A DNA stretch of 64,000 bases from Octopus bimaculoides (lineage: Eukaryota). The stretch lies in the NCBI RefSeq assembly GCF_001194135.2, contig NC_068983.1, positions 109,101,781 through 109,165,780 on the forward strand. The letters run 5' to 3'. This document shows, piece by piece, positions 316 to 56,963 of the stretch. How positions within the stretch are numbered: the stretch's first letter is position 1; each line of letters starts with the position of its first letter. Position numbers and translations under genes: made by a program. The notes beneath the pieces were generated by a model. The model was given only the letters and a program-made list of their open reading frames with translations. It was not told the DNA's origin and ran no database searches.

Positions 316-1593
316 CAGTGGGGGGAAATAAATATTTGTACATGTCAAAATTATTTATTTATTTAATTTCTAATGAACATAAATGGGATATACCAATACT
401 GTATTTGCATACACATGCATAAACTAAGAATATGCAAAAGAAACTAATAAATTATGGTAAATAATGAATTTATATACAGTTATAAATATTTAGGGGTGAG
501 AAAAGTATTCATACAGAAGAAATTTATGAGTTTCTATGCCACAAAATACTGTTAAAATAATTTTTTTTTACTAGAACTTTCTCGTTTGTTCCAATAATCT
601 TATCAGTAGTCATTTTTAAGTGTCAAAACGCTAGCTTCTTCATTCAGCACTGTGACAACATAAAGTAGTGTCGTAATAATGGCAAAAAGTAAAGAACTCA
701 CAAATTCAGTGAAAAACTTAATTATTGAACAGTGGAAAGCAGGTAAAAGTCACAGGAAAATATCAGAGACCGTTGTGTTCCATTTTCTACCATATCTTCA
801 TTTATTCAAAGATATAAAAATTGGGAACTGTTGAAAACAGAATAAGATCCGGTGCACCACACAAGATTTCCCCTAGATCTTTAAGAAAAATGAAGCGAAG
901 AATCGAAAAAACGCAATGATCACCAGAAAGAAGATTTGTTAGCTTCAGGGTTACTAACAGCTTCAATGTTACACTACGAACAATCAGTAATGAACTTCAT
1001 AGGAATGAAGTGAAGTCATGCTCTCCTAGAAAAACTCCGCTGTTGACTAAAAGGCATAGAGATGCCCGTTATAAAATTTGTTTGTGAACATAAAGATAAA
1101 TCTGATACATTCTGGGAAAAGGTTCTATGGAGAGACGAGTCAAAAATTGAATTGTTTGGATGAAATTCGCATAGCCATGTTTGGAGGAAAGATGGCACCA
1201 CTTATTTGCTGAAAAACACAATTCCTACTGTAAAGTTTGGAGGTGGCAATATCATAGTGTGGGGATGTTTCTCTGCAAATGGCACTGGCAATTTACATGT
1301 AATAGATGGTAGAATGAATGCAGAGATGTACCAAAATATTTTGAACAATAATTCAAGGGACTCTGTAAAAAAGCTCCAGCTTTGTGAAGGGTGGGTTTTA
1401 CAACAGGATAACGACTCTAAGCACACGGCGAAGTCTACCAAAAAATGTATTGTCAATCACAATATAAAATTATTAGAATGGCCAAGCCAGTCACCTGACT
1501 TGAACCCCATTGAAAATTTGTGGCGTTATTTGAAAATTAAAATTCATTCAAGAGCCCCAACGTGCATTCCAGATTTGAAGAAAATTTGTCAAG
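316..1593 (+). mobile_element. Tc1-family DNA transposon (DD34E), frameshifted, 3' end lost in the N-gap
   Basis: TA followed by a CAGTGGGGGGAAATAAATATTTG terminus at 316. The transposase starts at ATG 679 (MAKSKELTNSVKNL...). Catalytic motifs are [16 protein letters not shown] and [15 protein letters not shown], with 34 residues between the second D and E. Frameshifts and stops are present. Confidence 0.9.
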
Positions 1594-2282: not shown

Positions 2283-3725
2283 CTATGAAAGGTTGCTCAA
2301 TAAAGAGAATGAATGGGAGAAAGAGAGTCTGCCGAATGTCGACCCAACAAAGGGACCAGCTATCTGAGTTGACAGTACTTTGGTAGATAAAGCAATCAAG
2401 ATTATGAAGACAGGGAAAACCCCCAGCCCATCAGGAATCACTGCAGAGATGCTCAAAATATCTGGCAGTGTCAGCTATAGCCTAGTCACCCATATAGTTA
2501 ACCAGGTGATACACGAAGGAATCATACCCAATGACTGGTGTAGCAGCACCATAGTCAACTACTACAAAGGTAAAGGTGACACTTTAAATACAAATAATTA
2601 CAGAGGTATAAAGTTGGATCAGGTAATGAAGGTTACGGAGAGGGTCACAGCCCAAATAATTAGGGAGGGAGTCAGTTTAGATGAGATGCAGTTTGGGTTT
2701 GTGCCAGGGAAAAGCACTACTGATGCTATATTTCTGGTGAGACAGCTTCAGGAGAAATACCTAGTCAAAGATAAACCTCTGTACCTGGCTTTCGTTGACA
2801 TGGAGAAAGCCTTTGACAGGGTCCCTCGATCTGGTAGTCAATGAGGAAACTAGGGATAGATGAATGGTTAGTGAGAGCTGTGCTAGCCATGTACAGAGAC
2901 GCTGTCAGTAAGGTGAGGGTTGGCAACGAGTAGGGGTCCACCAAGGTTCAGTCCTTAGCCATCTCCTATTTATCATAGTCTTCCAGGCAATAACACAGGA
3001 ATTCAAGACAGTATGCCCCTGGGAGCTCCTCTATGCTGATGACATTGTTCTGATAGCTGAGTCACTATCAGAACTAGAGGAGAAGTTTCAGGTGTGGAAG
3101 CAAGGATTAGAATTGAAGGGCCTTAGAGTCAACCTAGCTAAAACCAAAGTACTAATAAGTAGGAAGGCAGACAAACCACAAATCCCTTCAGGTAGATGGC
3201 CCTGCTTGATCTGTAGAAAAGGCATAGGTAGAAACTCTATAAGATGTACCCAGTGTAAGCTATAGACACATAAGAGGTGGAGCAATATCAAAGGAAGGCT
3301 AACTGGAAAGATAGATTTTGTATGTGGCAGATGCTCAGGATTAATAAACACTGAAAATGTGCAGAGAACAACTTCTGCCACATTCCAGGGAGAAAAACTA
3401 GAAGTAGTTAATAGCTTCCATTATCTAGGTGACCACATCATTAGCAGGGCTGGGTGCACTGAAAGTGAAGCTGCTAGAATAAGAATAACTTGGGCAAAGT
3501 TCAGAGAGCTCCTACCTCTTCTGGTGACAAAGGGCCTCTCTCTCTGAGTAAAAGGTAGACTGTATGACGCATGTGTATGAACAGCCATGCTACATGGCAG
3601 TGAAATATGGGCCATGACTGCTGAGGACATGCGTAAGCCTGCAACGAATGAAGCCAGTGTGCTTTGCTGGATGTGTAATGTCAGTGTGCTTACTTGACAG
3701 AGTGTAAGTACCTTGAGAGAAAAGT
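2283..3725 (+). mobile_element. RTE-clade LINE fragment (reverse transcriptase region), decayed
   Basis: Translates to KTPSPSGITAEMLK, NNYRGIKL, QFGFVPGKSTTDAIFLVRQLQEK, AFVDMEKAFDRVPR, LYADDI (~3032-3043) and FHYLG, with stops and frameshifts. Confidence 0.9.
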
Positions 3726-14281: not shown

Positions 14282-14291
14282 NNNNNNNNNN

Positions 14292-14902
14292 TGCATGGCA
14301 AATTTTCAAGAAGAGGGAGAATGAAAATGTTTTTTACAAAAAAATAAAAAAAATAATATATAAAAAAATAATACATAAAAAAATAAATATACCAATACAT
14401 TATATTGTCTTTGAGCTTTTAAAGTTCACTGGTAATCCATGTGTATAATTGTTAGAAATATTAGGATGCATGGAATTGAGAGTTGTGTTTTGTTTAAAAA
14501 AAGGGGTCTGAAAGTTTGTGTTAAGCAGGAAGTGTGGTGTCAGAACAGGAAGTGTGTGTAAGGGAAGATAATTCTGTCTTCCCTTACACACACTTCCTGT
14601 TTTGACACTACACTTCCTGCTTATGTCTTCCCTTACACACACTTCCTGTTCTGACACCACACTTCCTGCTTAACACAAACTTTCAGACCCCTTTTTTTAA
14701 ACAAAGCACAACTCTCAATTCCATGCATCCTAATTTTTCCAACTATTATCTACATGGATTACCAGTGAACTTTAAAAGCTCAAAGACAATATAATGTATT
14801 GGTATATTTATTTCTTTTATATATTATTTTTTAATATATTATTTTTTATTTTTTTGTAAAAAAACATTTTCATTCTCCCTCTTCTTGAAAATTTGCCATG
14901 CA
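14292..14902. repeat. ~610-bp imperfect palindrome (foldback/MITE-like) with an internal ~48-bp duplication
   Basis: 14292-14568 is the reverse complement of 14626-14902, roughly 90-95% identical by eye. The spacer 14569-14625 holds an extra copy of the innermost arm unit. The left end abuts a 10-N gap. Confidence 0.9.
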
Positions 14903-15941: not shown

Positions 15942-17210
15942 CATGCAAGAAGTAAATAGATACCTTTAATTTTCAAAATTTCTGATATAAGCGTCTTAAT
16001 ATGTTTTCAGCAGTGTAGAATTTACAATGTAATCATTTTTTTTTTCATTCCAGGTGCCATTATATTAAACATTTGCAAAGAGTAACCGTGCCACACACAA
16101 AAAATTCAGCAGAACTGTCAGATTTTCAAAGAGGTTGTATTGTTAGGCAATCTGAGGTTGGTCTTAGCCAACGAAAATTGCTGAAAGTCTTCAAATTCCT
16201 CTTGCTTACTGCTAATGGAACTATAGTACAATTTAAAAGCCAAGGAAATGAATCAACAGATTCTCGTCCTGGCTGACCTGGGCCCTCAGAAAGGTAGCTT
16301 CACTGTTTGAAGAGAATGGTGGAAAACACCCCGTTCAAAGGCTTCTGACATTGCATAACAGGTAGAAGTTAGTCCAAGAACATGTGTTATATATCTGCAT
16401 AAGCTTGGATATTATGGACGAGCAGCTAGAAGAAGACCTCTCCTTTTACCAATTAATATCATGAAAAGAAAGAAATGGGCTAAGGAGATGCCAGAAAAAT
16501 CCAGTTCGTTTTGGGATAGAGTTATTTTCTCAGATGAATCTAGATTTGCCTTATTTTCAGACAGAGGACGTGTTTGTGTTTGGAGGCTTTCCAATCAAGA
16601 ATTTGATTTGAAACAACTCCAACCAACTGTGAAACATAGCGGTATCTCTGTAATGGTATGGGGAGCTGTCACCAGCAATGGTCGTTCTGAGCTGATCGAA
16701 TGCGTTGGAACCATAAACTATGAAAAATACATCGAAATACTTAAGCAAGGACTACTTCCAATGTATTCAAACTACAACATAACCAATAATGAGTTTTTAT
16801 TCATGGAAGATGGGGCTCCATGCCACGCAGTGAAAAGGAATCAGCAATGGCTGACTGAAAATGGGATCAAAAAGCTTCCTTGGCCAAGCCAACCTCCTGA
16901 CAGGAACCCAATTGAAAATCTTTGGAGCATACTAGATAGAGCTATATGAAAAACTCGACAGAAACCTAAATCTAAAGATGAATTGTTTCGATTGTTGTAT
17001 GAAATGTGGGCAGAAATTCCACAAGAAACAATCACAAAACTCATCAGTTCAATGCCAAAAAGTTTCTGAATTAATAACTGCAAAGGGAATGTCAACTAAA
17101 TACTAATGTATGTAGTCCTGCCTATCGATTACATTTCAATTGTTTGCTTTGCATATTAAATAGAAGATTTTGAAAATTAAAGGTGTCTATTTACTTCCTG
17201 CATGTGTGTG
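15936..17210 (+). mobile_element. Full-length decayed Tc1-family transposon (DD34E) with both TIRs
   Basis: ~46-bp TIRs: CACAGACATGCAAGAAGTAAATAGATACCTTTAATTTTCAAAAT at 15936 and its complement ending at 17210, with TA on the left. Transposase motifs [26 protein letters not shown] and [15 protein letters not shown] (D-34-E), with stops. Confidence 0.92.
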
Positions 17211-38462: not shown

Positions 38463-38499
38463 ATATATATATGTGTATGTATACATAAAAGTTTGCCAA

Positions 38500-39205
38500 T
38501 GTTTTGTGGTGTGAGGACCAGAGGCTTAAAGTACTTTGGATTGCAATACAGTGTATCAGAGAAAACTGTGAGATTATAGGAGAGAAGTGGATGATGACTC
38601 ACTTGCAGTTAGTGATTCAGGAAAAGAAGGAGGCATGGAAGTGCTACGATGTAAGGTTACTAAATGGAGAAAATGCATGGGAGAAAGAGAGCCCGTCTAA
38701 TATAGACCCAACAGAGGGAGTGGCTATCAGAATCAGTAATAGCTTAGTAAATAAAGCAATTAAGGATATAAAGACAGAGAAATCTCCTGGCCTATCAGGA
38801 ACCACCATTGACATCCTTGAAATATCTGGTGGGGTGTGATATGGCCTAGTCACTCATGTAGCTCATTAAGTTGTGTGCGAGGGAGTCAAACCCAATGACT
38901 GTTGTAACAGCACTATAGTCAATTGCTACATAGGTAAAAGTGATGCCTTATATAGAAAAAATTACAGAGGTATCAAATTGCTGGACCAAGTGATGAAAAT
39001 TACAGAAAGGGTCATAGCTCAATTAATTAGGAAAAGAGTTAGCCTAGATGAGATGCAGTTTGGGTTTTTGCCAGAAAGAAGCGCTACTGATGCTATCTTC
39101 CTGGCGAGGTAACTGCAGAAATACTTAGCCAAAAATAATCTTTGTGTAGGCTTTTGTTGGCACAGAGAAAGCCTTTGACAGGGACCCTCACTCCCTTATC
39201 TGGTG
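38500..39205 (+). mobile_element. RTE LINE RT fragment, same family as 2283-3725
   Basis: Translates to KSPGLSGTTIDILEISGG, NYRGIKLLDQVMK and QFGFLPERSATDAIFL; aligns with 2283-2840. Confidence 0.85.
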
Positions 39206-40567: not shown

Positions 40568-41846
40568 TCAGGTTGAGTAAAAAGCAATGTTTTGAACCAT
40601 GAAGAATTTGTACCTGATTTTTGCAGAGTTTTGAATTGTTTTAAAACATTTTTGAAATTGTCTGATAATACAGACATAAACTTGCCCAAATGCATCAATA
40701 AATTAACATTGGTATTTTTTTATCGTTGTTACCATCATCTGAAATGGAACTGTCAAAGCGCAATATTTGAACAATTTTGCGATTCAACTTCAAAAATTAA
40801 AAAAAGATGTAGAGCAGCTGAAACTCCTTGTGATATCAATTAAGCATTTGTTGAGAAAATGGCCTGTGAGTGGTCAGCTAGAAAAGGGTTTAAAAGATTT
40901 CACAGTGGAGACCTGAGCCTTGAAGATCATGAGTGTAGTGGACACCCATCTGTCATTGATGATGATCAATTACAGACTGTCATTGAGAAAGATCTACATA
41001 TAACCACTGGAGAACTGGCAAAAGAACTTCAAGTTAGCCATTAAACAGCCTGCAATCATTTGCATGCGATCAGAAAATCAAAAAAATCTCAACAAATGAG
41101 TACCACATGATTTGAATGAACATCAGATAATGAACAGATATGAAATTTGTTCATAGCTTCTTCTCAGTAACCAGACTGATCAATTTCTCAACTGTATTGT
41201 AGCTTGCAATGAAAAGTGGATTCTGTGCAATAATAAAAAACATTCTTTGCAGTGGTTGGACCAAAATGAAGCACTCCCTAAACCCCAAACCCCAGCTCTT
41301 CAAAAAGAAGGTTATGGCAACTGTTTGGTGGTGTACTGCTGGACTCATCCACTATAAATTCATAAAACCCAGAGAAACCACTACTGCAGAAACACATTGC
41401 CATGAAATTGTCAAAATGAACAAAAAACTGCTACTCCTCTGTCTAAGACCAGTCAACAGAAGAGGGTCAATAATTTTTCATGATAATGCTTGACCACATG
41501 TTTCACTAATGATGCTCCAGAAGTTGAGGGAACTTGGCTACAAAGTTCTTCCCCATCCAACTTATTCTCCAGATCTTTTTTCTCCAGAATACCACTTTTC
41601 AAGCTCCTTGATGGTTTCCTGTGAGAGAAGGAGTTCAAAACTCAAACTGATGCTAAAAGTGCATTCAAAGAGTTCATCAGCTCCAGAACTCCAGATTTTT
41701 ACCAGAATAAACAAACTTGTAACTCTTTGGCAAAAATGTGTTGATTGTAATGGTACTTACTTTTATGAAAAAAATTTCTGCATTGTTGAAATATATTGTG
41801 ATGAATTTCATGTTTCAAAACGTTGTTTACTTTTTACTCAGCCTGA
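40568..41846 (+). mobile_element. Full-length decayed mariner (DD34D class) with both TIRs
   Basis: TIRs TCAGGTTGAGTAAAAAG at 40568 and CTTTTTACTCAGCCTGA ending at 41846, with TA on the left. Motifs (W)VPHDL, C(D>N)EKWI, IFHDNA and HPTYSPDL are present; the third catalytic position reads E; many stops. Confidence 0.92.
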
Positions 41847-44049
41847 CAACTTTTTCATTTAATGTCTGTTATTCTATGTTAGCAAGTCTTTGATGGTAAT
41901 TGATTTTGAGGCAGGATTCTAGGGCTAGATACTTTCCCAGTTATCATTCATCACCCGATTTTCAAGTGAGGTATTTGATAAGGCCTACAGGTTTTCAAAT
42001 GTACAGAGTTATCAGTTATAATATCAACAATGAATAGCTTTGCTGAAATGATGATAATCAAAATAACAGTGAGTGATGTTTCATGGTAATTTATAATGAA
42101 ACTATTCTGTTTTACACTTACACATTTAAATATATTTCTATTGCATTTCATTTTTCAAGTAACCGATTATCTTCTTCATATACCATATAGCTTGTTCATC
42201 AGATGATGTGTTGTACATAACTGAGCCATTGAGCTATATAGTGCATACTGAAATAACTAGCTGAAAGCAAAATGAATTTGTTTTTCCATATAAAAATTTT
42301 AACTTCTCAAACATATATATATATAGGTTACTGGAACTTCTGTAGTTTCTGAGATAATGGAGCAAAATGAATCATATCATTGCAAGCACTTAACACTTTG
42401 GTAGTTGTGTATGTAGGATAAGAAGTTAGTACTGAAAGTTAATAGCATGTCTGAGTAAATGTTGTTTTAACACTCATATTCTGAAAATGTTAAATTAACC
42501 ATATTCTAGTTATGTATCTAATAGGTCTATGAAACAAAGATTTTAAAGCTTTTAAACAATGTGTGTAATCAGTCTGTTTCATTTCCCACTTCAATACAGT
42601 AAACTTCCTAATTAATATCTTTATAGTTTTTATAGCTGATGAACGAAGCCTATAATTGTTGTTTGCGATCAGTCATTAGAGAAGCATTTAAATTTAATGG
42701 TCTTCCAATATTCATCAGATTCATTCTTGAATTTGTTGGCTGTCTTTCATGTGCTAACTTCAGTTGATAATTGAATTGAGTATGCTGGGAGGATATTTGA
42801 AGTTTGGTGCCTTGTTAACATGTGTTTTATTTTGCAAATAATATTAAAGAATGAGTGCTTGTTGGTAAATTTTCAACTTTAACTTTGCTGAAATTTACTT
42901 AACCTGTTAACTTAAAAGTACATGTCATATCTCCATTTCTAATCTGTGGGATTAAAAATGTGAATCAAGTGTCCTATGTTTAACCTCATGCAACAAGTCT
43001 TTTAAAGATGTAATCACTAAAGTATCTTTGTTTTGTGCACTTTCTACAAATATCTGATCCTTGAAGACCTGGAGTCCCAAAACAGTGTCATCAATTCTTA
43101 ACTACCTGATTATTAGTTGTTAATTCTAGGTTTTTTATTAAGAAAATAGTTCACTTAGTAAGGAAATATTATACACATGCATTTTGTTCAAAATGAAATA
43201 CCAGCGAAATATTTGTAAATTTGTGTATTTATAGTAGCTTCTAATAATCTCAGTTTAAAACCAACCATTTATCATTAAACAGTTTGCAAATTAAGTTAGA
43301 AAAAGGAGGAATAAATTTCATAAAAATTCGATCTTGAATCAAGATCTGACATTTTCAATATAGTGTTTTCTTTAAATAATAAAACAAAAATAATTTTCCT
43401 TGGGCAATTACTAAATCATTGGTAATTTATCAGATCATTGTCTAATATGAAAAATATCTCACGTCTAAGAATTCCTTAGATGAACTGATAAAAGATAAAA
43501 TTATGATTATGGACAAAACTATAAAACTTCAATAGCCTAGAAACATAAAGCCTATTTTGAAAAGTTAAAAAACTCCATTAAAGTTGTCAAGATTTGAACT
43601 TCATCATGTAGTTAACACGATTTTTTTCTATGTGAGATTTGAAATGAAAATATTAATTTCTGTCAGATCAAGGAGATAATTAGTGGAAAGCCATTTTACT
43701 TCAATGATAAACTTTTGTATAAGATTACTTCAATTAATATATTTGTGAAATGTTTAAGTTATAAGATTGTATTTCTGCATTTTGAAGATATTGGCTTGGG
43801 AGTAATGCAATATTGTCAATAAGTCATAAATCCAGAGTAAGGTCCAATATTTATAAAATAAAATATATCAACATTTCAATTTTGCATCAGGGAATAATAG
43901 AAATAAAAAATAGTTTCAGAAAAGTTTATTAGATTAGTGAAAGGTTAACATGTTGCATATACCAATATTATGTCTGAAGAAAAATTCAAAATAAATTTGA
44001 ATCGCTCAGAATATTTAAAAATTTTTAATTTTTTCAATTCCTTGATTAT

Positions 44050-46300: not shown

Positions 46301-47891
46301 GTGCTCCATTCAGTAGCACTTTATTCATCTGGAGTACAAGTATAACAAATTGCTCAGCTCTTTGTACAGACAATAATATAGACAGTAGATATACTAAACA
46401 TAAAAAAGGAGAAACCACAGGCATAACCTATAATACTACTACTACATTATTCTCTATATTTGTACGTACATACCTTTAGGCATGTATTATATGAGTTCTC
46501 TAATGTTACTCAGCCTAACATAACCCTCTGAGACATTTTACAGTTATCCTTACTGTACAATTGACTTAGAATACATTGTGAAAATCCACTTACATTACAC
46601 AAACGTGATTTGACTGATTTCCCAGAACTAATTATATTTGTTAGGGTAATAGACTGTCTGTGTATATTTAAAGGGTTATATAAGCAAAGCAAGAAAGCCT
46701 TAATGTTATTGCTGGACGTTTGTGATATGTCAAATACACTACGTGAGTCTAAGTGAACTCTACAATGCTCATAAATTTATCACTACTTATATTATCTTAA
46801 TCAGTATTACACACAGTATTTACATGTAAAGGTCCCCTATTATGGTCTCACTTATTAAAACATGTATCCACATCCACATTATTGTGTGCGACTGTATGGC
46901 AATTTCTACAATAAAACAGAATGAAAATTTTTTTTTGAAAAATTAGTTTTAATTTCACTATTTGATTGGATGTTCCTCCATTCTGAAATGAATATTCATG
47001 ACTCCTGTCTGCCCCATTCTCTATGCACCACTGTTTATTTACAAGCTCTCTCACAAAGAACATTTGAAAAATTAAATCTAGCAAATAATAGTGGTTTATA
47101 TATTATAGATTGCACCTTTTTCTCCAACAAAATTCAACACTTTAAAGAAACCATATACAGGCTAGTTGTAGAAATGAATATAAGTAGTTGTATAACTATA
47201 GTTGTATAGTTACAAGAAAAATGTTACACTTATTATGAAGAGTCAAAACGTTTTAGTTGAAAATGAAAAACCAATGAAGTGAAGACTAACTGATAGATAA
47301 GGAACTGAATTACAATAAGTGAAATTTTCTGAAATACTGGCATTGTCAAATGTGACAAAAAATGTTTACAGTGTATACATTGTTAAAAAAATTCTAATAA
47401 ATGTTTTATATTGTCTATATATAAATTTTACTTTGAGCTTCTAACAATATTAATTTTTGCTGTTAATTCTCAAGGTGGTGCTCCAGCATGGCCACAGTCA
47501 ACTGACTGAAACAAGTAAAAGAATAAAAGAATATCTAATGAAGTATTGACAAACAAACAAGCAGGAGACATCTGGTTGTAAAACAAGAGAATGATACATT
47601 TTATGCAAAGTAGAAAATGTTTGTGCGAATATGGAAATAACTGATGCTGGTTAAATAATATCAAAATACATACTCCTTCAAACACTTACACACACATGCA
47701 TGCACGCATGCAGACACGCACACACAAACACACACACACATTTTAAACTTAATCCATAATAAATTCCAATCTACTGGAAGAGGTATCTATAGCATTGGCA
47801 GTATATTAACCTTCAACAGTATCACTGGGTATCAAGCTGATGATTCTGATCTGAATCTAAAACATACAGAAACCAAACAATTCAATGCTAC

Positions 47892-47930
<39 letters not shown>

Positions 47931-48447
47931 AAAAGTGCCACACCCTAACAGTTGAGGGAACCCGTGGAAGAGGTAGGCCCAGGAAGACCTGGGCTGAGGT
48001 GGTGAGGCAAGACCTTCGTACATTGGGCCTCACCGAGGCGATGACTACGGACCGAGACCTTTGGAAATGGGCTGTGCATGAGAAGACCCGGCAAGCCAAG
48101 TAAGATCGTTGCCAGTGCCCCTGGACNNNNNNNNNNNNNNNNNNNNNNNNNNNNNNNNNNNNNNNNNNNNNNNNNNNNNNNNNNNNNNNNNNNNNNNNNN
48201 NNNNNNNNNNNGCTTGTGCGGGTGGCACATAAAAGACACCATTTCGAGCGTGGCCGTTTTCGTGCGGGTGACACGTAAAAGCACCCACTACACTCTCTGA
48301 GTGGTTGGCGTTAGGAAGGGCATCCAGCTGTAGAAACTCTGCCAAATCAGACTGGAGCCTGGTGTTGCCATCCGGTTTCACCAGTCCTCAGTCAAATCGT
48401 CCAACCCATGCTAGCATGGAAAGCGGACGTTAAACGATGATGATGAT
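47931..48447 (+). mobile_element. Young RTE LINE 3' end (ORF C-terminus, 3' UTR, (GAT)n tail), interrupted by a gap
   Basis: KKCHTLTVEGTRGRGRPRKTWAEVVRQDLRTLGLTEAMTTDRDLWKWAV is open to its stop, CpGs are retained, and the tail reads GATGATGATGAT. Confidence 0.92.
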
Positions 48448-53027: not shown

Positions 53028-53095
<68 letters not shown>

Positions 53096-53187
53096 AAACA
53101 TATATATTAATAATGCAGTTACATATTTTTTACGCATGCTCAACCACTGATATTATTATAAATAATAATATCCTCATATATATTTAG

Positions 53188-53229
<42 letters not shown>

Positions 53230-53637
53230 ATATATGTATGTGTGTTTATATATGTGTATATATGTGTGTGTATGTGTGTTTATATATGTGTGTGTATATA
53301 TATGTATATGTATGTATATATATATGTATATATATATGTATATACATATGTAACTATATATATAACTATATATATATATATNNNNNNNNNNNNNNNNNNN
53401 NNNNNNNNNNNNNNNNNNNNNNNNNNNNNNNNNNNNNNNNNNNNNNNNNNNNNNNNNNNNNNNNNNNNNNNNNNNNNNNNNNNNNNNNNNNNNNNNNNNN
53501 NNNNNNNNNNNTATATATATGAAAAATATATATACACATGTAAATATAATGATAATAAAATGACAACAAAAGAATGAAACCTCAATATTAGGTAAATAGA
53601 GCAACTTATATATGTATAGTATAGGACAATCTGTAAG

Positions 53638-53712
53638 TTGTCATAATAGGGCTCAAAGTTTCAAATGCCGGAGCTAAGAGCTACAAAGCATTTTCATCAG
53701 CCATTTTGACAA
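53638..53712 (-). ncRNA. Type I hammerhead ribozyme motif, predicted inactivated (GCC instead of GUC)
   Basis: Minus strand: stem I UUGUCAAAAUGG/CUAUUAUGACAA; CUGAUGA (53700-53694); stem II AAAUGC/GCAUUU; GAAA (53662-53659); CUUUGAGC-C. U16.1 is replaced by C. Confidence 0.75.
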
Positions 53713-53971
53713 TAGACACCGTGAAAAACCGTTTAATAAAAGGGAAGTTGCTCTAATAGACAGGAAAAGTTATAAAAGATGAAAAATAAACAATAGATAT
53801 TATAAAAAATACATGCAAATATATTCTCACACAACCATATTTTATACGTTTTGTGAGAATATGACTGCATGTATTTTTTATAATTTTAATTTTTTATTTT
53901 TTATCTTTTATAATTTTTCCTGTCAAATAGAGTAACTTCCCTTTTATTCAATGGATTTTTCATAGCGCCTC

Positions 53972-54046
53972 TTGTCAAAATGACTGATGAAAATGTATCA
54001 TAGCTCTTCGTCCCGGCATTTGAAACTCTGAGTCTTATTATGACAG
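53972..54046 (+). ncRNA. Type I hammerhead ribozyme motif (GUC triplet, predicted cleavage after 54034)
   Basis: Stem I UUGUCAAAAUGA/UUAUUAUGACAG (11 of 12 paired); CUGAUGA 53984-90; stem II AAAUG/CAUUU plus U.G; GAAA 54022-25; self-complementary stem III ACUCUGAGU; C17 at 54034. Confidence 0.85.
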
Positions 54047-54574
54047 CTTACAAATTGTCCAATGCTATACATATATAAATTCCTCTATTTACCTAATATC
54101 GAGGTCTCATTCTTTTGTTTTTGTTTAATTATTATTCTTAATATATTTANNNNNNNNNNNNNNNNNNNNNNNNNNNNNNNNNNNNNNNNNNNNNNNNNNN
54201 NNNNNNNNNNNNNNNNNNNNNNNNNNNNNNNNNNNNNNNNNNNNNNNNNNNNNNNNNNNNNNNNNNNNNNNNNNNNNNNNNNNNNNNNNNNNNNNNNNNN
54301 NNNNNNNNNNNNNNNNNNNNNNNNNNNNNNNNNNNNNNNNNNNNNNNNNNNNNNNNNNNNNNNNNNNNNNNNNNNNNNNNNNNNNNNNNNNNNNNNNNNN
54401 NNNNNNNNNNNNNNNNNNNNNNNNNNNNNNNNNNNNNNNNNNNNNNNNNNNNNNNNNNNNNNNNNNNNNNNNNNNNNNNNNNNNNNNNNNNNNNNNNNNN
54501 NNNNNNNNNNNNNNNNNNNNNNNNNNNNNNNNNNNNNNNNNNNNNNNNNNNNNNNNNNNNNNNNNNNNNNNNNN

Positions 54575-55834: not shown

Positions 55835-56210
55835 AAACTTAATCTTACAGCTGTTTCAGCCTAGCATTGGCATGCCCCATTCTATCCGAATAGCTCCTGC
55901 CGGAGTAATTAGCGGATGAAATGCTGAAACGGGGGTACATGCACAATTCGCTAGGCCTCTTCAGAGATTCACAAAAAAATCCATACAAATATACTGTAAG
56001 AGATAAAAACAAAAATGAAATAGAAATAAAAATAAAAACAAAACTAAAAATAAAAATAAGGGTACAGCAAGAATAAAAAAAAAAAAAAAATGAAAAATGA
56101 AAATATAACATAAAAAAAATATAAAAATATAAAAATATAAGGCACATAAAAAGCCTACAAACAGTACATGAGGTCATACAAATAACTATAGACACTCTAA
56201 TATATAAGTC
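55835..56210 (-). mobile_element. Penelope pLTR/retrozyme-like element (U-rich tract followed by a hammerhead)
   Basis: The minus strand reads a long U-rich tract (forward A-rich 55970-56140) directly into the HHR at 55969-55841, the same architecture as the arms of 53541-54149. Confidence 0.55.
55841..55969 (-). ncRNA. Type I hammerhead ribozyme motif (GUA triplet) with a ~100-nt extended stem II
   Basis: Stem I AAUCU/AGAUU; CUGAAGA (55964-58); stem II GGCCUAGC/GCUAGGCU continuing AUUG/CAAU, GCAUG/CAUGC, CCCC/GGGG, AUCCG/CGGAU and CUCC-GGCA-GGAG; GAAA (55857-54); palindromic stem III CAGCUG. Cleavage is predicted between 55846 and 55845. Confidence 0.85.
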
Positions 56211-56369
56211 CGTGTGCATAACCATACTTAGATGCTCAATGATTCAAGATCATATATATATATGTGAGTACACATGTGTGTCTATATCCATCTATCCCCT
56301 CACACATACGTATACATATACAAATATGTATACACAGACATTCTCCTACGTACATGTATCATGTGTTGA

Positions 56370-56963
56370 ATATGGATTGGGACAGCTGTGTGAAAAAGTG
56401 TCACACCTAACCGTGGAGAGAACCTGTGGTAGGGGCAGACCCAGGAAGACCTGGAATGAGGTGGTGGTGCATGACCTTCAAATGCTGGGTCTCACAGAGG
56501 CAATGACAAGCAACCGAAGCCTTTGAAGGTATGCTGTGCTTGAGAAGACCTGGTAAGCCAAGTGAGATCATAGCTGTGGCCAGTACCAGTGTTGAATAAC
56601 TGGTTCATTTAAAAGTACTCTTCAATCGTCAGGCAATATGCTGTACTTGAGAAGACCTGTTGAGTCAAGTGAAATCATAGTTGTGGCTGATACCAGTGCT
56701 GGCTGGCATTTGTGCTGGTGGCATATAAAAAGCATTATTTGAATGTGGTCGATGCTAGTGCCACCTGATTGGCTCCTATGCCAGTGGCTTGTAAAAAGCA
56801 CCCACTACATTCTTGGAGTGGTTGGCGTTAGGAAGGACATCCAGCTGTAGAAACCTTGCTAGATCAGATTGGAGCCTAGTGCAGCCTCCTGGTTTGCCAG
56901 CCCTCAGTCAAACCATCCAACCCATGCCAGCATGGAAAGCAGACGTTAAATGATGATGATGAT
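56370..56963 (+). mobile_element. RTE LINE 3' end with an internally duplicated 3' UTR and (GAT)n tail
   Basis: TVERTCGRGRPRKTWNEVV.HDLQMLGLTEAMT; ~60-bp direct repeat at ~56532-56592 and ~56639-56699; tail ends at 56963. Confidence 0.85.

What the first reader, a model, noticed from the sequence alone, without database searches (positions are those of the whole stretch)
53541..54149. Palindromic element carrying two divergent hammerhead ribozymes with compensatory base pairs
Seen in sequence: a ~290-bp-arm palindrome in which each arm, read outward, gives a U-rich tract and then a complete type I hammerhead fold (53972-54046 on +, 53712-53638 on -). The arms differ in ways that preserve pairing: the core-proximal stem I pair is A-U in one and G-C in the other, the distal stem I pair is U.G versus U-A, and the last stem II pair is U.G versus C-G. 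The right arm keeps GUC; the left arm has U16.1>C. Established: Penelope-like elements and retrozymes carry type I HHRs, often with short palindromic stem III that works as a dimer, and PLEs can form inverted pLTR junctions. Inference: a transcript crossing this unit from either side reads one antisense and one sense arm, so it can form either a ~290-bp dsRNA hairpin (RNAi/ADAR substrate) or a self-cleaving ribozyme. That would make it a conformational switch or bidirectional self-cleavage cassette. If the palindrome moves as a unit, it would be an unusual non-autonomous dual-ribozyme element. I cannot check whether it has already been described.
Basis: partly seen in the sequence, partly recalled or inferred. 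Interest (0 to 1): 0.85.

Follow-up and report, generated by a model that had tools for sequence, protein, structure and literature searches.

The report
Decayed inverted repeat with relic hammerheads
A real ~600-bp palindrome in an octopus-like genome carries a hammerhead-ribozyme-like motif on each arm, but it looks like an old, neutrally decaying head-to-head duplicate of a ribozyme-bearing retroelement repeat, a known arrangement, and not a new ribozyme/dsRNA switch.

Summary
The sequence observation holds. Arms 53548-53835 and 53848-54136 are 84% complementary around a 12-nt spacer. The right motif has a full catalytic core, three helices and GUC. It is the only such hit in the window, and none matching all its helix lengths appears in 693 Mb of shuffled sequence.

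- No Rfam hammerhead model scores either arm, even at E<=10 over 88 nt.
- The 10.1-11.1 pair is A-U, not the conserved G-C, and the left arm has C at 16.1.
- Monomeric helix III never forms in silico.
- Arm-to-arm identity is flat (84% in the HHR, 81-86% elsewhere).
- The single compensatory pair is expected by chance about 26% of the time.
- In read-through transcripts a hairpin of about -220 to -320 kcal/mol sequesters the motif completely.
- An inverted pair cannot supply the tandem sense copies that weak-helix-III HHRs need in order to dimerise.

Best reading: a roughly 25-My-old head-to-head duplicate of an HHR-bearing Penelope-like pLTR or retrozyme-type repeat, next to a microsatellite in a transposon-rich region. 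Family copy number and covariation could not be tested, because no octopus genome was searchable at the DNA level.

The parts
53512..54149 (.). Whole unit: one 638-bp contig bounded by assembly gaps 53382-53511 and 54150-54574. The palindrome's outer right end, and therefore any target-site duplication, is lost in the gap.
53548..53835 (-). Left arm; its sense strand reads outward on the minus strand. About 84% identical to the right arm.
53836..53847 (.). 12-nt non-palindromic spacer at the symmetry centre. The arms realign within about 6 nt of the centre, so the junction is symmetric.
53848..54136 (+). Right arm; its sense strand reads outward on the plus strand. Similarity to the left arm continues roughly to the gap at 54150.
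53873..53920 (+). T-rich (U-rich) tract upstream of the right HHR motif, mirrored in the left arm. It lies in the 22% GC central region 53724-53959.
53972..54046 (+). Right-arm type I hammerhead-like motif.
- Helix I: 53972-53983 with 54035-54046 (11 of 12 pairs).
- Core: CUGAUGA 53984-53990.
- Helix II: 53991-54021 (6 bp at its base, 19-nt distal part).
- GAAA: 54022-54025.
- Helix III: 54025-54033 (ACUCUGAGU).
- C17 at 54034; predicted cleavage between 54034 and 54035.
The core is intact, but 10.1-11.1 is A-U.
53638..53712 (-). Left-arm hammerhead-like motif.
- C3 at 53700.
- GAAA at 53662-53659.
- C instead of U at 16.1 (53651), giving an A15.1.C16.1 mismatch.
- C17 at 53650.
- Helix II is stable (P=0.99) and includes an inner AGCU/AGCU hairpin.
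53028..53381 (.). Compound (AT)n/(TG)n microsatellite abutting the left side of the unit. TA-rich sequence resumes at 53512-53545. This may be the insertion target.

Best explanation
The unit is an old, non-coding, head-to-head (inverted) duplicate of the HHR-bearing terminal repeat of a retroelement. The source was either a Penelope-like element pLTR or a related retrozyme-type unit of about 300 nt. It sits beside an (AT)n/(TG)n microsatellite in a transposon-rich region of an octopus-like genome.

Shown:
- The palindrome is real, and both arms carry a hammerhead core with helices I-III in the type I arrangement.
- The arms have diverged 16%, uniformly along their length.
- One motif has lost U16.1, and the other has lost its helix II stability.

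Inferred:
- Both arms arose in a single insertion event, because the junction is symmetric with a 12-nt loop. Two routes are plausible: priming of reverse transcription from both cleaved target strands, which PLE enzymes can do in vitro, or snap-back self-priming of the cDNA.
- The arms then decayed neutrally for roughly 25 My.
- The hammerheads are relics inherited from the parent element, where tandem sense copies would have allowed dimeric self-cleavage.
- At this locus they have no ribozyme function. Any transcript that crosses the unit simply forms a long imperfect dsRNA hairpin, like any other inverted repeat, and would be a generic ADAR or small-RNA substrate.
For: - Palindrome and symmetric junction.
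- HHR motif beyond chance. It is the single strict hit in the window and appears in 0 of 300 shuffles. The rate is 0.003 lax hits per window, with no hit matching all observed helix lengths in 693 Mb. None of 178 pattern-selected metagenome/viral loci reaches its quality.
- Neutral decay. Arm identity is 85/81/84(HHR)/86% by segment. There are 12 differences in 75 nt, including a broken A15.1-U16.1 pair. The compensatory signal is at chance level.
- No ribozyme-competent fold at this locus.
- Literature. Inverted 5'-truncated copies next to pLTRs, HHRs in pLTRs, assembly breakage and microsatellite targets are all described for PLEs (PMC8557442). A PLE protein cleaves and extends both target strands and prefers AT-rich sites (PMC11167929). 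Type I HHRs sit in AT-rich units of 150-450 bp and a weak helix III means dimer action (PMC7229834; PMC4209133). O. vulgaris has about 30 active Penelope families, and PLEs expanded around 56 My ago at JC about 0.2 (PMC13282606). Giant squid has 235 Rfam Hammerhead_1 hits (PMC6962438).
- Age. An arm-to-arm JC distance of about 0.18, or 0.09 per arm, corresponds to about 25 My on the calibration in PMC13282606.
- Host. A Tc1 ORF is 84% identical in protein, and 90% in nucleotides, to an O. vulgaris copy.
Against: - The window contains no PLE reverse transcriptase or GIY-YIG coding sequence (tblastn with Poseidon_Ac; stop-free scans).
- No second copy of the arm was found in the window, in 20 kb of O. 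vulgaris, or in the metagenome/viral collections. Membership of a repeat family is therefore assumed, not shown.
- No Rfam hammerhead model scores it.
- A symmetric junction is not what two independent 5' truncations would give.
- The microsatellite flank is weak evidence, because microsatellites are common in this window.
Confidence: 0.6

Rival explanations
1. Foldback/MITE-like DNA element. The palindrome itself is the mobile unit, with long terminal inverted repeats, and the hammerhead-like motif is carried inside each repeat.
For: The arms are symmetric with only a 12-nt spacer. The unit is AT-rich and non-coding, with no RT nearby. Octopus genomes hold many MITE/TIR families (PMC13282606).
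Against: No other copy exists in the window. Termini and target-site duplications are unreadable because of the gap. In animals, hammerhead motifs are documented in retroelements, namely PLEs and retrozymes.
Confidence: 0.12
2. One reading: a functional bidirectional self-cleaving cassette or ribozyme/dsRNA conformational switch.
For: The right arm has an intact core. One compensatory and two one-sided pair-preserving changes, with only one broken pair, give a joint P of 0.05. Half of the differences fall in distal helix II.
Against: - HHR helices have probability 0 in read-through RNAs.
- The hairpin is -322 kcal/mol, against -5.5 for the HHR fold.
- The HHR segment is not better conserved than the rest of the arm.
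- The left arm has C16.1, and the right arm's helix II is destabilised.
- There are no tandem sense copies for dimerisation.
- There is no Rfam hit.
Confidence: 0.06
3. The hammerhead-like motif is a chance occurrence inside an unrelated palindromic repeat.
For: - One hit of comparable quality (helices 8/6/2) appeared in 693 Mb of shuffles, so a few would be expected in a 2-3 Gb genome.
- There is no Rfam support.
- The 10.1-11.1 pair is A-U.
- Lax hits occur in a bacterial coding sequence.
Against: The per-window probability is about 1e-4. Helix I has 11 of 12 pairs, and the motif has a quasi-palindromic helix III and GUC. Its setting, an AT-rich repeat of about 300 nt, is the documented one for type I HHRs.
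Confidence: 0.1
4. Assembly artefact: a chimeric or falsely inverted contig.
For: It is a 638-bp contig isolated between two gaps. PLE-type structures are known to confuse short-read assemblies.
Against: The arms differ at 16% of positions, and the longest perfect inverted stretch is about 19 nt. A read-plus-reverse-complement artefact would give identical arms.
Confidence: 0.05
5. A box C/D snoRNA-like unit: UGAUGA, then CUGA, with a terminal stem.
For: There are weak Rfam matches to C/D families such as SNORD73, SNORD46 and Afu_298 at 13-17 bits. UGAUGA, CUGA and a terminal stem are all present.
Against: All matches have E of 1.6-9.6 and fall far below gathering scores. The C box begins with C, not R. 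This reading ignores the GAAA, helix II and GUC features that make the HHR pattern improbable by chance.
Confidence: 0.02

Closest known systems
Penelope-like element (PLE) pLTR junctions with an inverted 5'-truncated upstream copy (Evgen'ev & Arkhipova 2005; Craig et al. 2021, PMC8557442)
   Same: Head-to-head inverted repeat of a terminal region that carries a type I hammerhead motif. AT-rich/microsatellite neighbourhood. Breaks a short-read assembly. The host lineage is known to carry Penelope families.
   Different: No RT/GIY-YIG ORF is present. The junction is symmetric. The HHR lacks the PLE min-HHR hallmarks, namely the 9/10.1 bulge, G10.1-C11.1 and a short helix I.
Metazoan non-LTR retrozymes (Cervera & de la Pena 2020, PMC7229834)
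   Same: AT-rich non-coding unit of about 300 nt with a type I HHR. Helix III is short (2-3 bp) and quasi-palindromic, like invertebrate HHRs.
   Different: Retrozymes are direct tandem arrays that yield circRNAs. Here the two units are inverted and there is no tandem copy.
Canonical type I hammerhead (Rfam RF00163 Hammerhead_1; Schistosoma/newt satellite HHRs)
   Same: CUGAUGA...GAAA core, open helix I, A15.1-U16.1 and GUC cleavage triplet in the right arm.
   Different: 10.1-11.1 is A-U. The helix II element is 31 nt long and helix I is 11 bp. The motif gets no score from the Rfam model.
Long inverted-repeat hairpin RNA loci (hpRNA / ADAR-edited inverted repeats)
   Same: A transcript across the unit would fold into an imperfect duplex of about 290 bp. 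The centre weakly resembles miRNA-precursor hairpin models.
   Different: There is no evidence of transcription. The Rfam hairpin matches are far below gathering scores (56 vs 211 bits; 35 vs 100 bits).

Membership tests
Hammerhead ribozyme, type I | Conserved core C3-U4-G5-A6-N7-G8-A9 and G12-A13-A14 | tested here: met
   Both arms have it: CUGAUGA and GAAA at 53984-53990/54022-54025 (+) and 53700-53694/53662-53659 (-).
Hammerhead ribozyme, type I | Three helices around the core, with helix I open | tested here: inconclusive
   By pairing rules, helix I has 11 of 12 pairs, helix II 6 bp and helix III 3 bp. Thermodynamically, helix I has P about 0.7 and helix II has P of 0.17 (right) or 0.99 (left). 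Helix III has P about 0 in both arms and in all 4096 arm mosaics.
Hammerhead ribozyme, type I | A15.1-U16.1 pair followed by H17 at the cleavage site | tested here: inconclusive
   Met in the right arm (A-U, C17 at 54034). Not met in the left arm (A.C, C at 53651).
Hammerhead ribozyme, type I | Highly conserved G10.1-C11.1 pair (PMC4209133) | tested here: not met
   A10.1-U11.1 in both arms.
Hammerhead ribozyme, type I | Match to the Rfam hammerhead covariance models | tested here: not met
   No hammerhead family at gathering score, at E<=10 on 638 nt, or at E<=10 on 88 nt around each motif. I obtained no positive control for PLE-type HHRs.
Hammerhead ribozyme, type I | Covariation in helices across family members | tested here: inconclusive
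   Only two sequences are available. There is 1 compensatory pair, 2 one-sided changes and 1 broken pair. P(at least 1 compensatory)=0.26; the joint P is 0.05.
Hammerhead ribozyme, type I | Mg2+-dependent self-cleavage after position 17 | not testable with these tools
   Requires in vitro transcription.
Penelope-like element (pLTR) | Adjacent ORF with RT and GIY-YIG endonuclease | tested here: not met
   tblastn with Poseidon_Ac gives a best E of 4.1 anywhere in the window. No such segment appears in the stop-free scans. The adjacent gaps total 555 nt as written.
Penelope-like element (pLTR) | Terminal repeats that may be inverted, with an HHR inside the repeat | tested here: met
   Inverted arms, each with the motif. 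Architecture as described in PMC8557442.
Penelope-like element (pLTR) | Min-HHR hallmarks: unpaired nucleotide between 9 and 10.1, helix II of 6-8 bp, helix I of 4-5 bp, palindromic 15.2-16.2/loop 3 | tested here: inconclusive
   Helix II of 6 bp and a quasi-palindromic ACUCUGAGU are met. The bulge and the short helix I are not met.
Penelope-like element (pLTR) | Sequence similarity to a curated octopus PLE terminal repeat | not testable with these tools
   No octopus genome or repeat library is searchable at the DNA level. The PLE protein search returned no octopus entry among the 120 listed hits.
Metazoan non-LTR retrozyme | Type I HHR inside an AT-rich unit of 150-450 bp | tested here: met
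   The arm is at least 289 nt, with GC of 22-39% by segment.
Metazoan non-LTR retrozyme | Direct tandem repetition of the unit | tested here: not met
   Only the inverted pair exists. blastn and nhmmer --max find no direct copy.
Foldback/MITE DNA transposon | Defined termini with target-site duplication, and multiple copies of the whole palindrome | not testable with these tools
   The right end runs into the gap at 54150. No other copy exists in the window.
Box C/D snoRNA | C box RUGAUGA and D box CUGA brought together by a terminal stem, plus a match to a family model | tested here: not met
   The C box starts with C. The best snoRNA matches are 13-17 bits at E of 1.6-9.6, below gathering scores of 35-60.

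The most novel reading that the evidence does not exclude
The whole palindrome is the consensus unit of a cephalopod family of non-autonomous elements. Such elements would move as an inverted dimer and carry two divergent hammerheads of an unusual variant (A10.1-U11.1, extended helix II, 11-bp helix I). The hairpin form would act as a silencing or editing substrate, and arm-only transcripts would self-cleave.
Probability: 0.07. Interest if true: 0.6.

Novelty: new member of a known kind. Interest (0 to 1): 0.25.

Why it matters
If the best reading is right, this is one more fossil of the known association between type I hammerheads and Penelope-like or retrozyme retroelements, here in a cephalopod. 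Its value is mostly for annotation. It marks a hammerhead variant that Rfam models miss, and a locus where an inverted PLE-type junction broke a short-read assembly.

It would matter more only if genome-wide data showed that the palindrome is a recurrent mobile unit, or that the A10.1-U11.1 variant is a conserved, active family.

Tried and rejected
1. Rfam at gathering score on the whole window, and at E<=10 on 638 nt and on 88 nt around each motif, gave no hammerhead family. It returned only sub-threshold miRNA-hairpin and C/D snoRNA matches.
2. Other copies in the window: blastn with word size 9 and nhmmer --max found none.
3. An exact two-block HHR pattern in metagenome contigs gave 0 hits. 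A relaxed pattern gave 120 loci and a viral scan gave 58 loci. All are chance matches limited to the pattern itself, and the lax descriptor hits lie in a conserved bacterial coding sequence.
4. The 'pseudo-protein' trick, using a 48-aa stop-free antisense stretch to catch gene calls on copies in public assemblies, found no candidates.
5. PLE protein route. The Poseidon_Ac protein from a paper supplement gave 4581 homologues but no octopus entry among the 120 listed.
6. Two PLE loci fetched as positive controls (L179, L180) showed neither Rfam nor descriptor HHRs, so they could not serve as controls.
7. An O. vulgaris chromosome locus and an ENA contig reached through the Tc1 protein share only the paralogous Tc1 copy and have no arm copy.
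I replaced them with stop-free segment scans.
9. Rejected: the miRNA-precursor reading, because the scores are a quarter to a third of gathering. Rejected: the C/D snoRNA reading, for the reasons given under the rival explanations.

Full report
**What is there**

The window is a gap-ridden scaffold of 32% GC. A Tc1 transposase remnant at 16359-16946 is 84% identical in protein to an Octopus vulgaris entry and 90% identical in nucleotides to an O. vulgaris chromosome copy. The host is therefore an octopus or a close relative.

The finding lies on a 638-bp contig (53512-54149) between N-gaps 53382-53511 and 54150-54574. The palindrome is real:
- The repeat finder reports arms 53548-53744/53940-54136 (82% complementary) and 53724-53835/53848-53959 (86%). 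Together these form one inverted repeat of about 289 nt per arm with a 12-nt spacer.
- blastn gives 83.6% identity over 591 nt.
- The MAFFT alignment shows that the arms realign within about 6 nt of the centre.

The arms differ at 16% of positions and the longest perfect inverted stretch is about 19 nt. A simple read-plus-reverse-complement assembly artefact is therefore unlikely.

**The hammerhead motifs**

The right arm (53972-54046, +) has:
- CUGAUGA at 53984-53990;
- a helix II element at 53991-54021 with six closing pairs;
- GAAA at 54022-54025;
- ACUCUGAGU as helix III;
- C17 at 54034;
- a helix I with 11 of 12 positions paired.

The left arm (53712-53638, -) has the same layout but with C at 16.1 (53651).

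My strict type I descriptor finds exactly one hit in the 64 kb on both strands, and it is this one. The chance controls are as follows:
- None of 300 dinucleotide shuffles gave a hit, even at lax thresholds.
- In 11,155 shuffles (693 Mb, both strands) there were 32 lax hits, or 0.003 per window. One hit was of roughly comparable quality (helices 8/6/2). None matched all the observed helix lengths.
- None of 178 metagenome and viral loci pre-selected for the core pattern reached this quality.

The motif is therefore improbable for this window (about 1e-4), although a 2-3 Gb genome would be expected to hold a few comparable chance hits.

**Evidence against an active ribozyme**

- *Rfam.* No hammerhead family scores either arm at gathering score, at E<=10 over the 638-nt unit, or at E<=10 over 88 nt centred on each motif. 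I obtained no positive control for PLE-type hammerheads, because the two PLE loci I fetched contain no detectable HHR. The negative is therefore informative but not decisive. Others have detected cephalopod type I HHRs with Rfam, for example 235 Hammerhead_1 hits in giant squid (PMC6962438).
- *The 10.1-11.1 pair.* It is A-U in both arms, whereas G10.1-C11.1 is described as highly conserved (PMC4209133).
- *Folding energy.* The HHR fold is about 6 kcal/mol worse than the MFE in both arms: -5.5 vs -11.1 (right) and -12.2 vs -18.7 (left).
- *Pair probabilities.* Helix I is supported at about 0.7. Helix II is supported only in the left arm (0.99, against 0.17 in the right). Helix III is never supported, in either arm or in any of the 4096 mosaics of the two arms. 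Its 3' strand pairs with C3/U4 instead.

A weak, quasi-palindromic helix III is the documented signature of metazoan type I HHRs that cleave as dimers formed by tandem sense copies (PMC4209133; PMC7229834). An inverted pair places the two sense copies on different strands, so no single transcript can form the dimer.

**The compensatory argument**

The two 75-nt motifs differ at 12 positions, which is 84% identity. The other arm segments are 85%, 81% and 86% identical, so the ribozyme segment is not preferentially conserved.

Among the differences there is one compensatory pair, two one-sided pair-preserving changes and one broken pair, the essential 15.1-16.1. With 12 substitutions placed at random and the observed transition bias:
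- at least one compensatory pair arises 26% of the time;
- at least one compensatory pair together with at most one broken pair arises 5% of the time.

This null is biased towards structure, because the pairs were defined on one of the two sequences. The signal is at most a faint trace of past constraint and is not evidence of function.

**The switch model**

A transcript spanning both arms folds into a hairpin of -322 kcal/mol. In transcripts that read through from the far arm and stop just after the HHR emerges, all three HHR helices have probability 0. In those transcripts 66-67 of the 75 motif nucleotides pair with the opposite arm.

In arm-only transcripts the right arm forms no HHR helices (P about 0.02). 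The left arm forms helices I and II, but it lacks U16.1 and never forms helix III.

Each arm therefore has a different defect, and the hairpin dominates whenever both arms are present. I find no support for a conformational switch or a bidirectional cleavage cassette.

**What it most likely is**

Published descriptions of Penelope-like elements match the anatomy:
- Insertions are often partial tandems that form pLTRs.
- HHRs are 'typically located within pLTRs'.
- Such structures cause problems in short-read assemblies.
- Microsatellites such as (TA)n are preferred targets (PMC8557442).

A purified PLE protein cleaves and extends both target strands and prefers AT-rich DNA (PMC11167929). That offers a route to two cDNA copies meeting head-to-head. 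Snap-back self-priming would also produce a symmetric junction with a short loop. Both routes are inference.

O. vulgaris carries about 30 active Penelope families, and PLEs expanded around 56 My ago at JC about 0.2 (PMC13282606). The arm-to-arm distance of JC about 0.18, or 0.09 per arm, corresponds to about 25 My on that paper's calibration, assuming the arms were identical at birth.

The left side abuts a 350-bp compound (AT)n/(TG)n array. This is weak evidence, because microsatellites are frequent in the window.

The arm length (at least 289 nt) and AT-richness (22-39% GC) also fit the retrozyme-type unit (PMC7229834). A recent preprint argues that animal retrozymes derive from PLE pLTRs (10.64898/2026.07.22.740005).

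**What does not fit, and what I could not test**

What does not fit:
- The window contains no PLE coding sequence.
- The motif lacks several PLE min-HHR hallmarks.

What I could not test:
- I found no second copy of the arm in the window, in 20 kb of O. vulgaris or in the metagenome and viral collections. No octopus genome was searchable at the DNA level.
- Family membership, copy number, palindrome recurrence, target-site duplications and covariation therefore all remain untested.
- The right end of the unit is lost in the gap.

**Verdict**

The sequence-level observation is accurate and the hammerhead-like motif is not a window-level coincidence. The locus behaves like a neutrally decaying, TE-derived inverted duplicate with relic hammerheads, which is a known kind of structure. 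It is not a new regulatory device.

I rate it a new member of a known kind, with interest about 0.25. The residual novel possibility, a recurrent palindromic dual-hammerhead mobile family with an unusual HHR variant, has a probability of about 0.07.

Noticed in passing
window 53710-53974 and 53801-53882: The AT-rich centre of the palindrome gives sub-threshold Rfam matches to miRNA-precursor hairpin models: MIR8562 at 56 bits vs gathering 211, and mir-3149 at 35 and 30 bits vs 100. This is generic long-hairpin resemblance and not family membership.
   Followed up: partly
window 2368-3544 (+) and 38489-39109 (+): Frame-broken LINE reverse-transcriptase remnants. RVT_1 scores E=9e-9 and 4e-12 at 2368-3262, with a weaker fragment (E=0.002) at 38870-39109. 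They are not PLE-type.
   Followed up: partly
window 16019-16946 (+), 1206-1590 (+), 41203-41859 (+): Tc1 (DDE_3, HTH_Tnp_Tc3_2) and mariner (Transposase_1) transposase remnants. The Tc1 copy is 90% identical in nucleotides to a paralogous copy on O. vulgaris chromosome OX597817.1, and 92% identical to an ENA metagenome contig.
   Followed up: partly
window 47861-48100 (+) and 56125-56523 (+): Two stop-free segments share a C-terminal motif (GRGRPRKTW..VV..DL..LGLTEAMT). It resembles the end of an RTE-type LINE ORF, judging from my own knowledge. Neither has a Pfam hit.
   Followed up: no
loci L023, L027, L032, L087, L111 (metagenome contigs): A conserved bacterial coding sequence (translating as ...LTDENMDMQPLFETILEHV...) contains CTGATGAAAAT...ATTTGAAAC with short flanking complementarity. 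It passes a lax hammerhead descriptor and so is a recurrent false positive for core-pattern HHR searches.
   Followed up: partly
protein P0082: A PLE-type RT protein 62% identical to the lizard Poseidon_Ac query is labelled 'hypothetical protein, partial [Escherichia coli]' on a 2.6-kb contig. This is probably eukaryotic contamination in a bacterial assembly.
   Followed up: no
window 14575-14672: A 49-bp unit is duplicated in tandem (2.0 copies, 95% match), just downstream of the 10-nt gap at 14282-14291.
   Followed up: no
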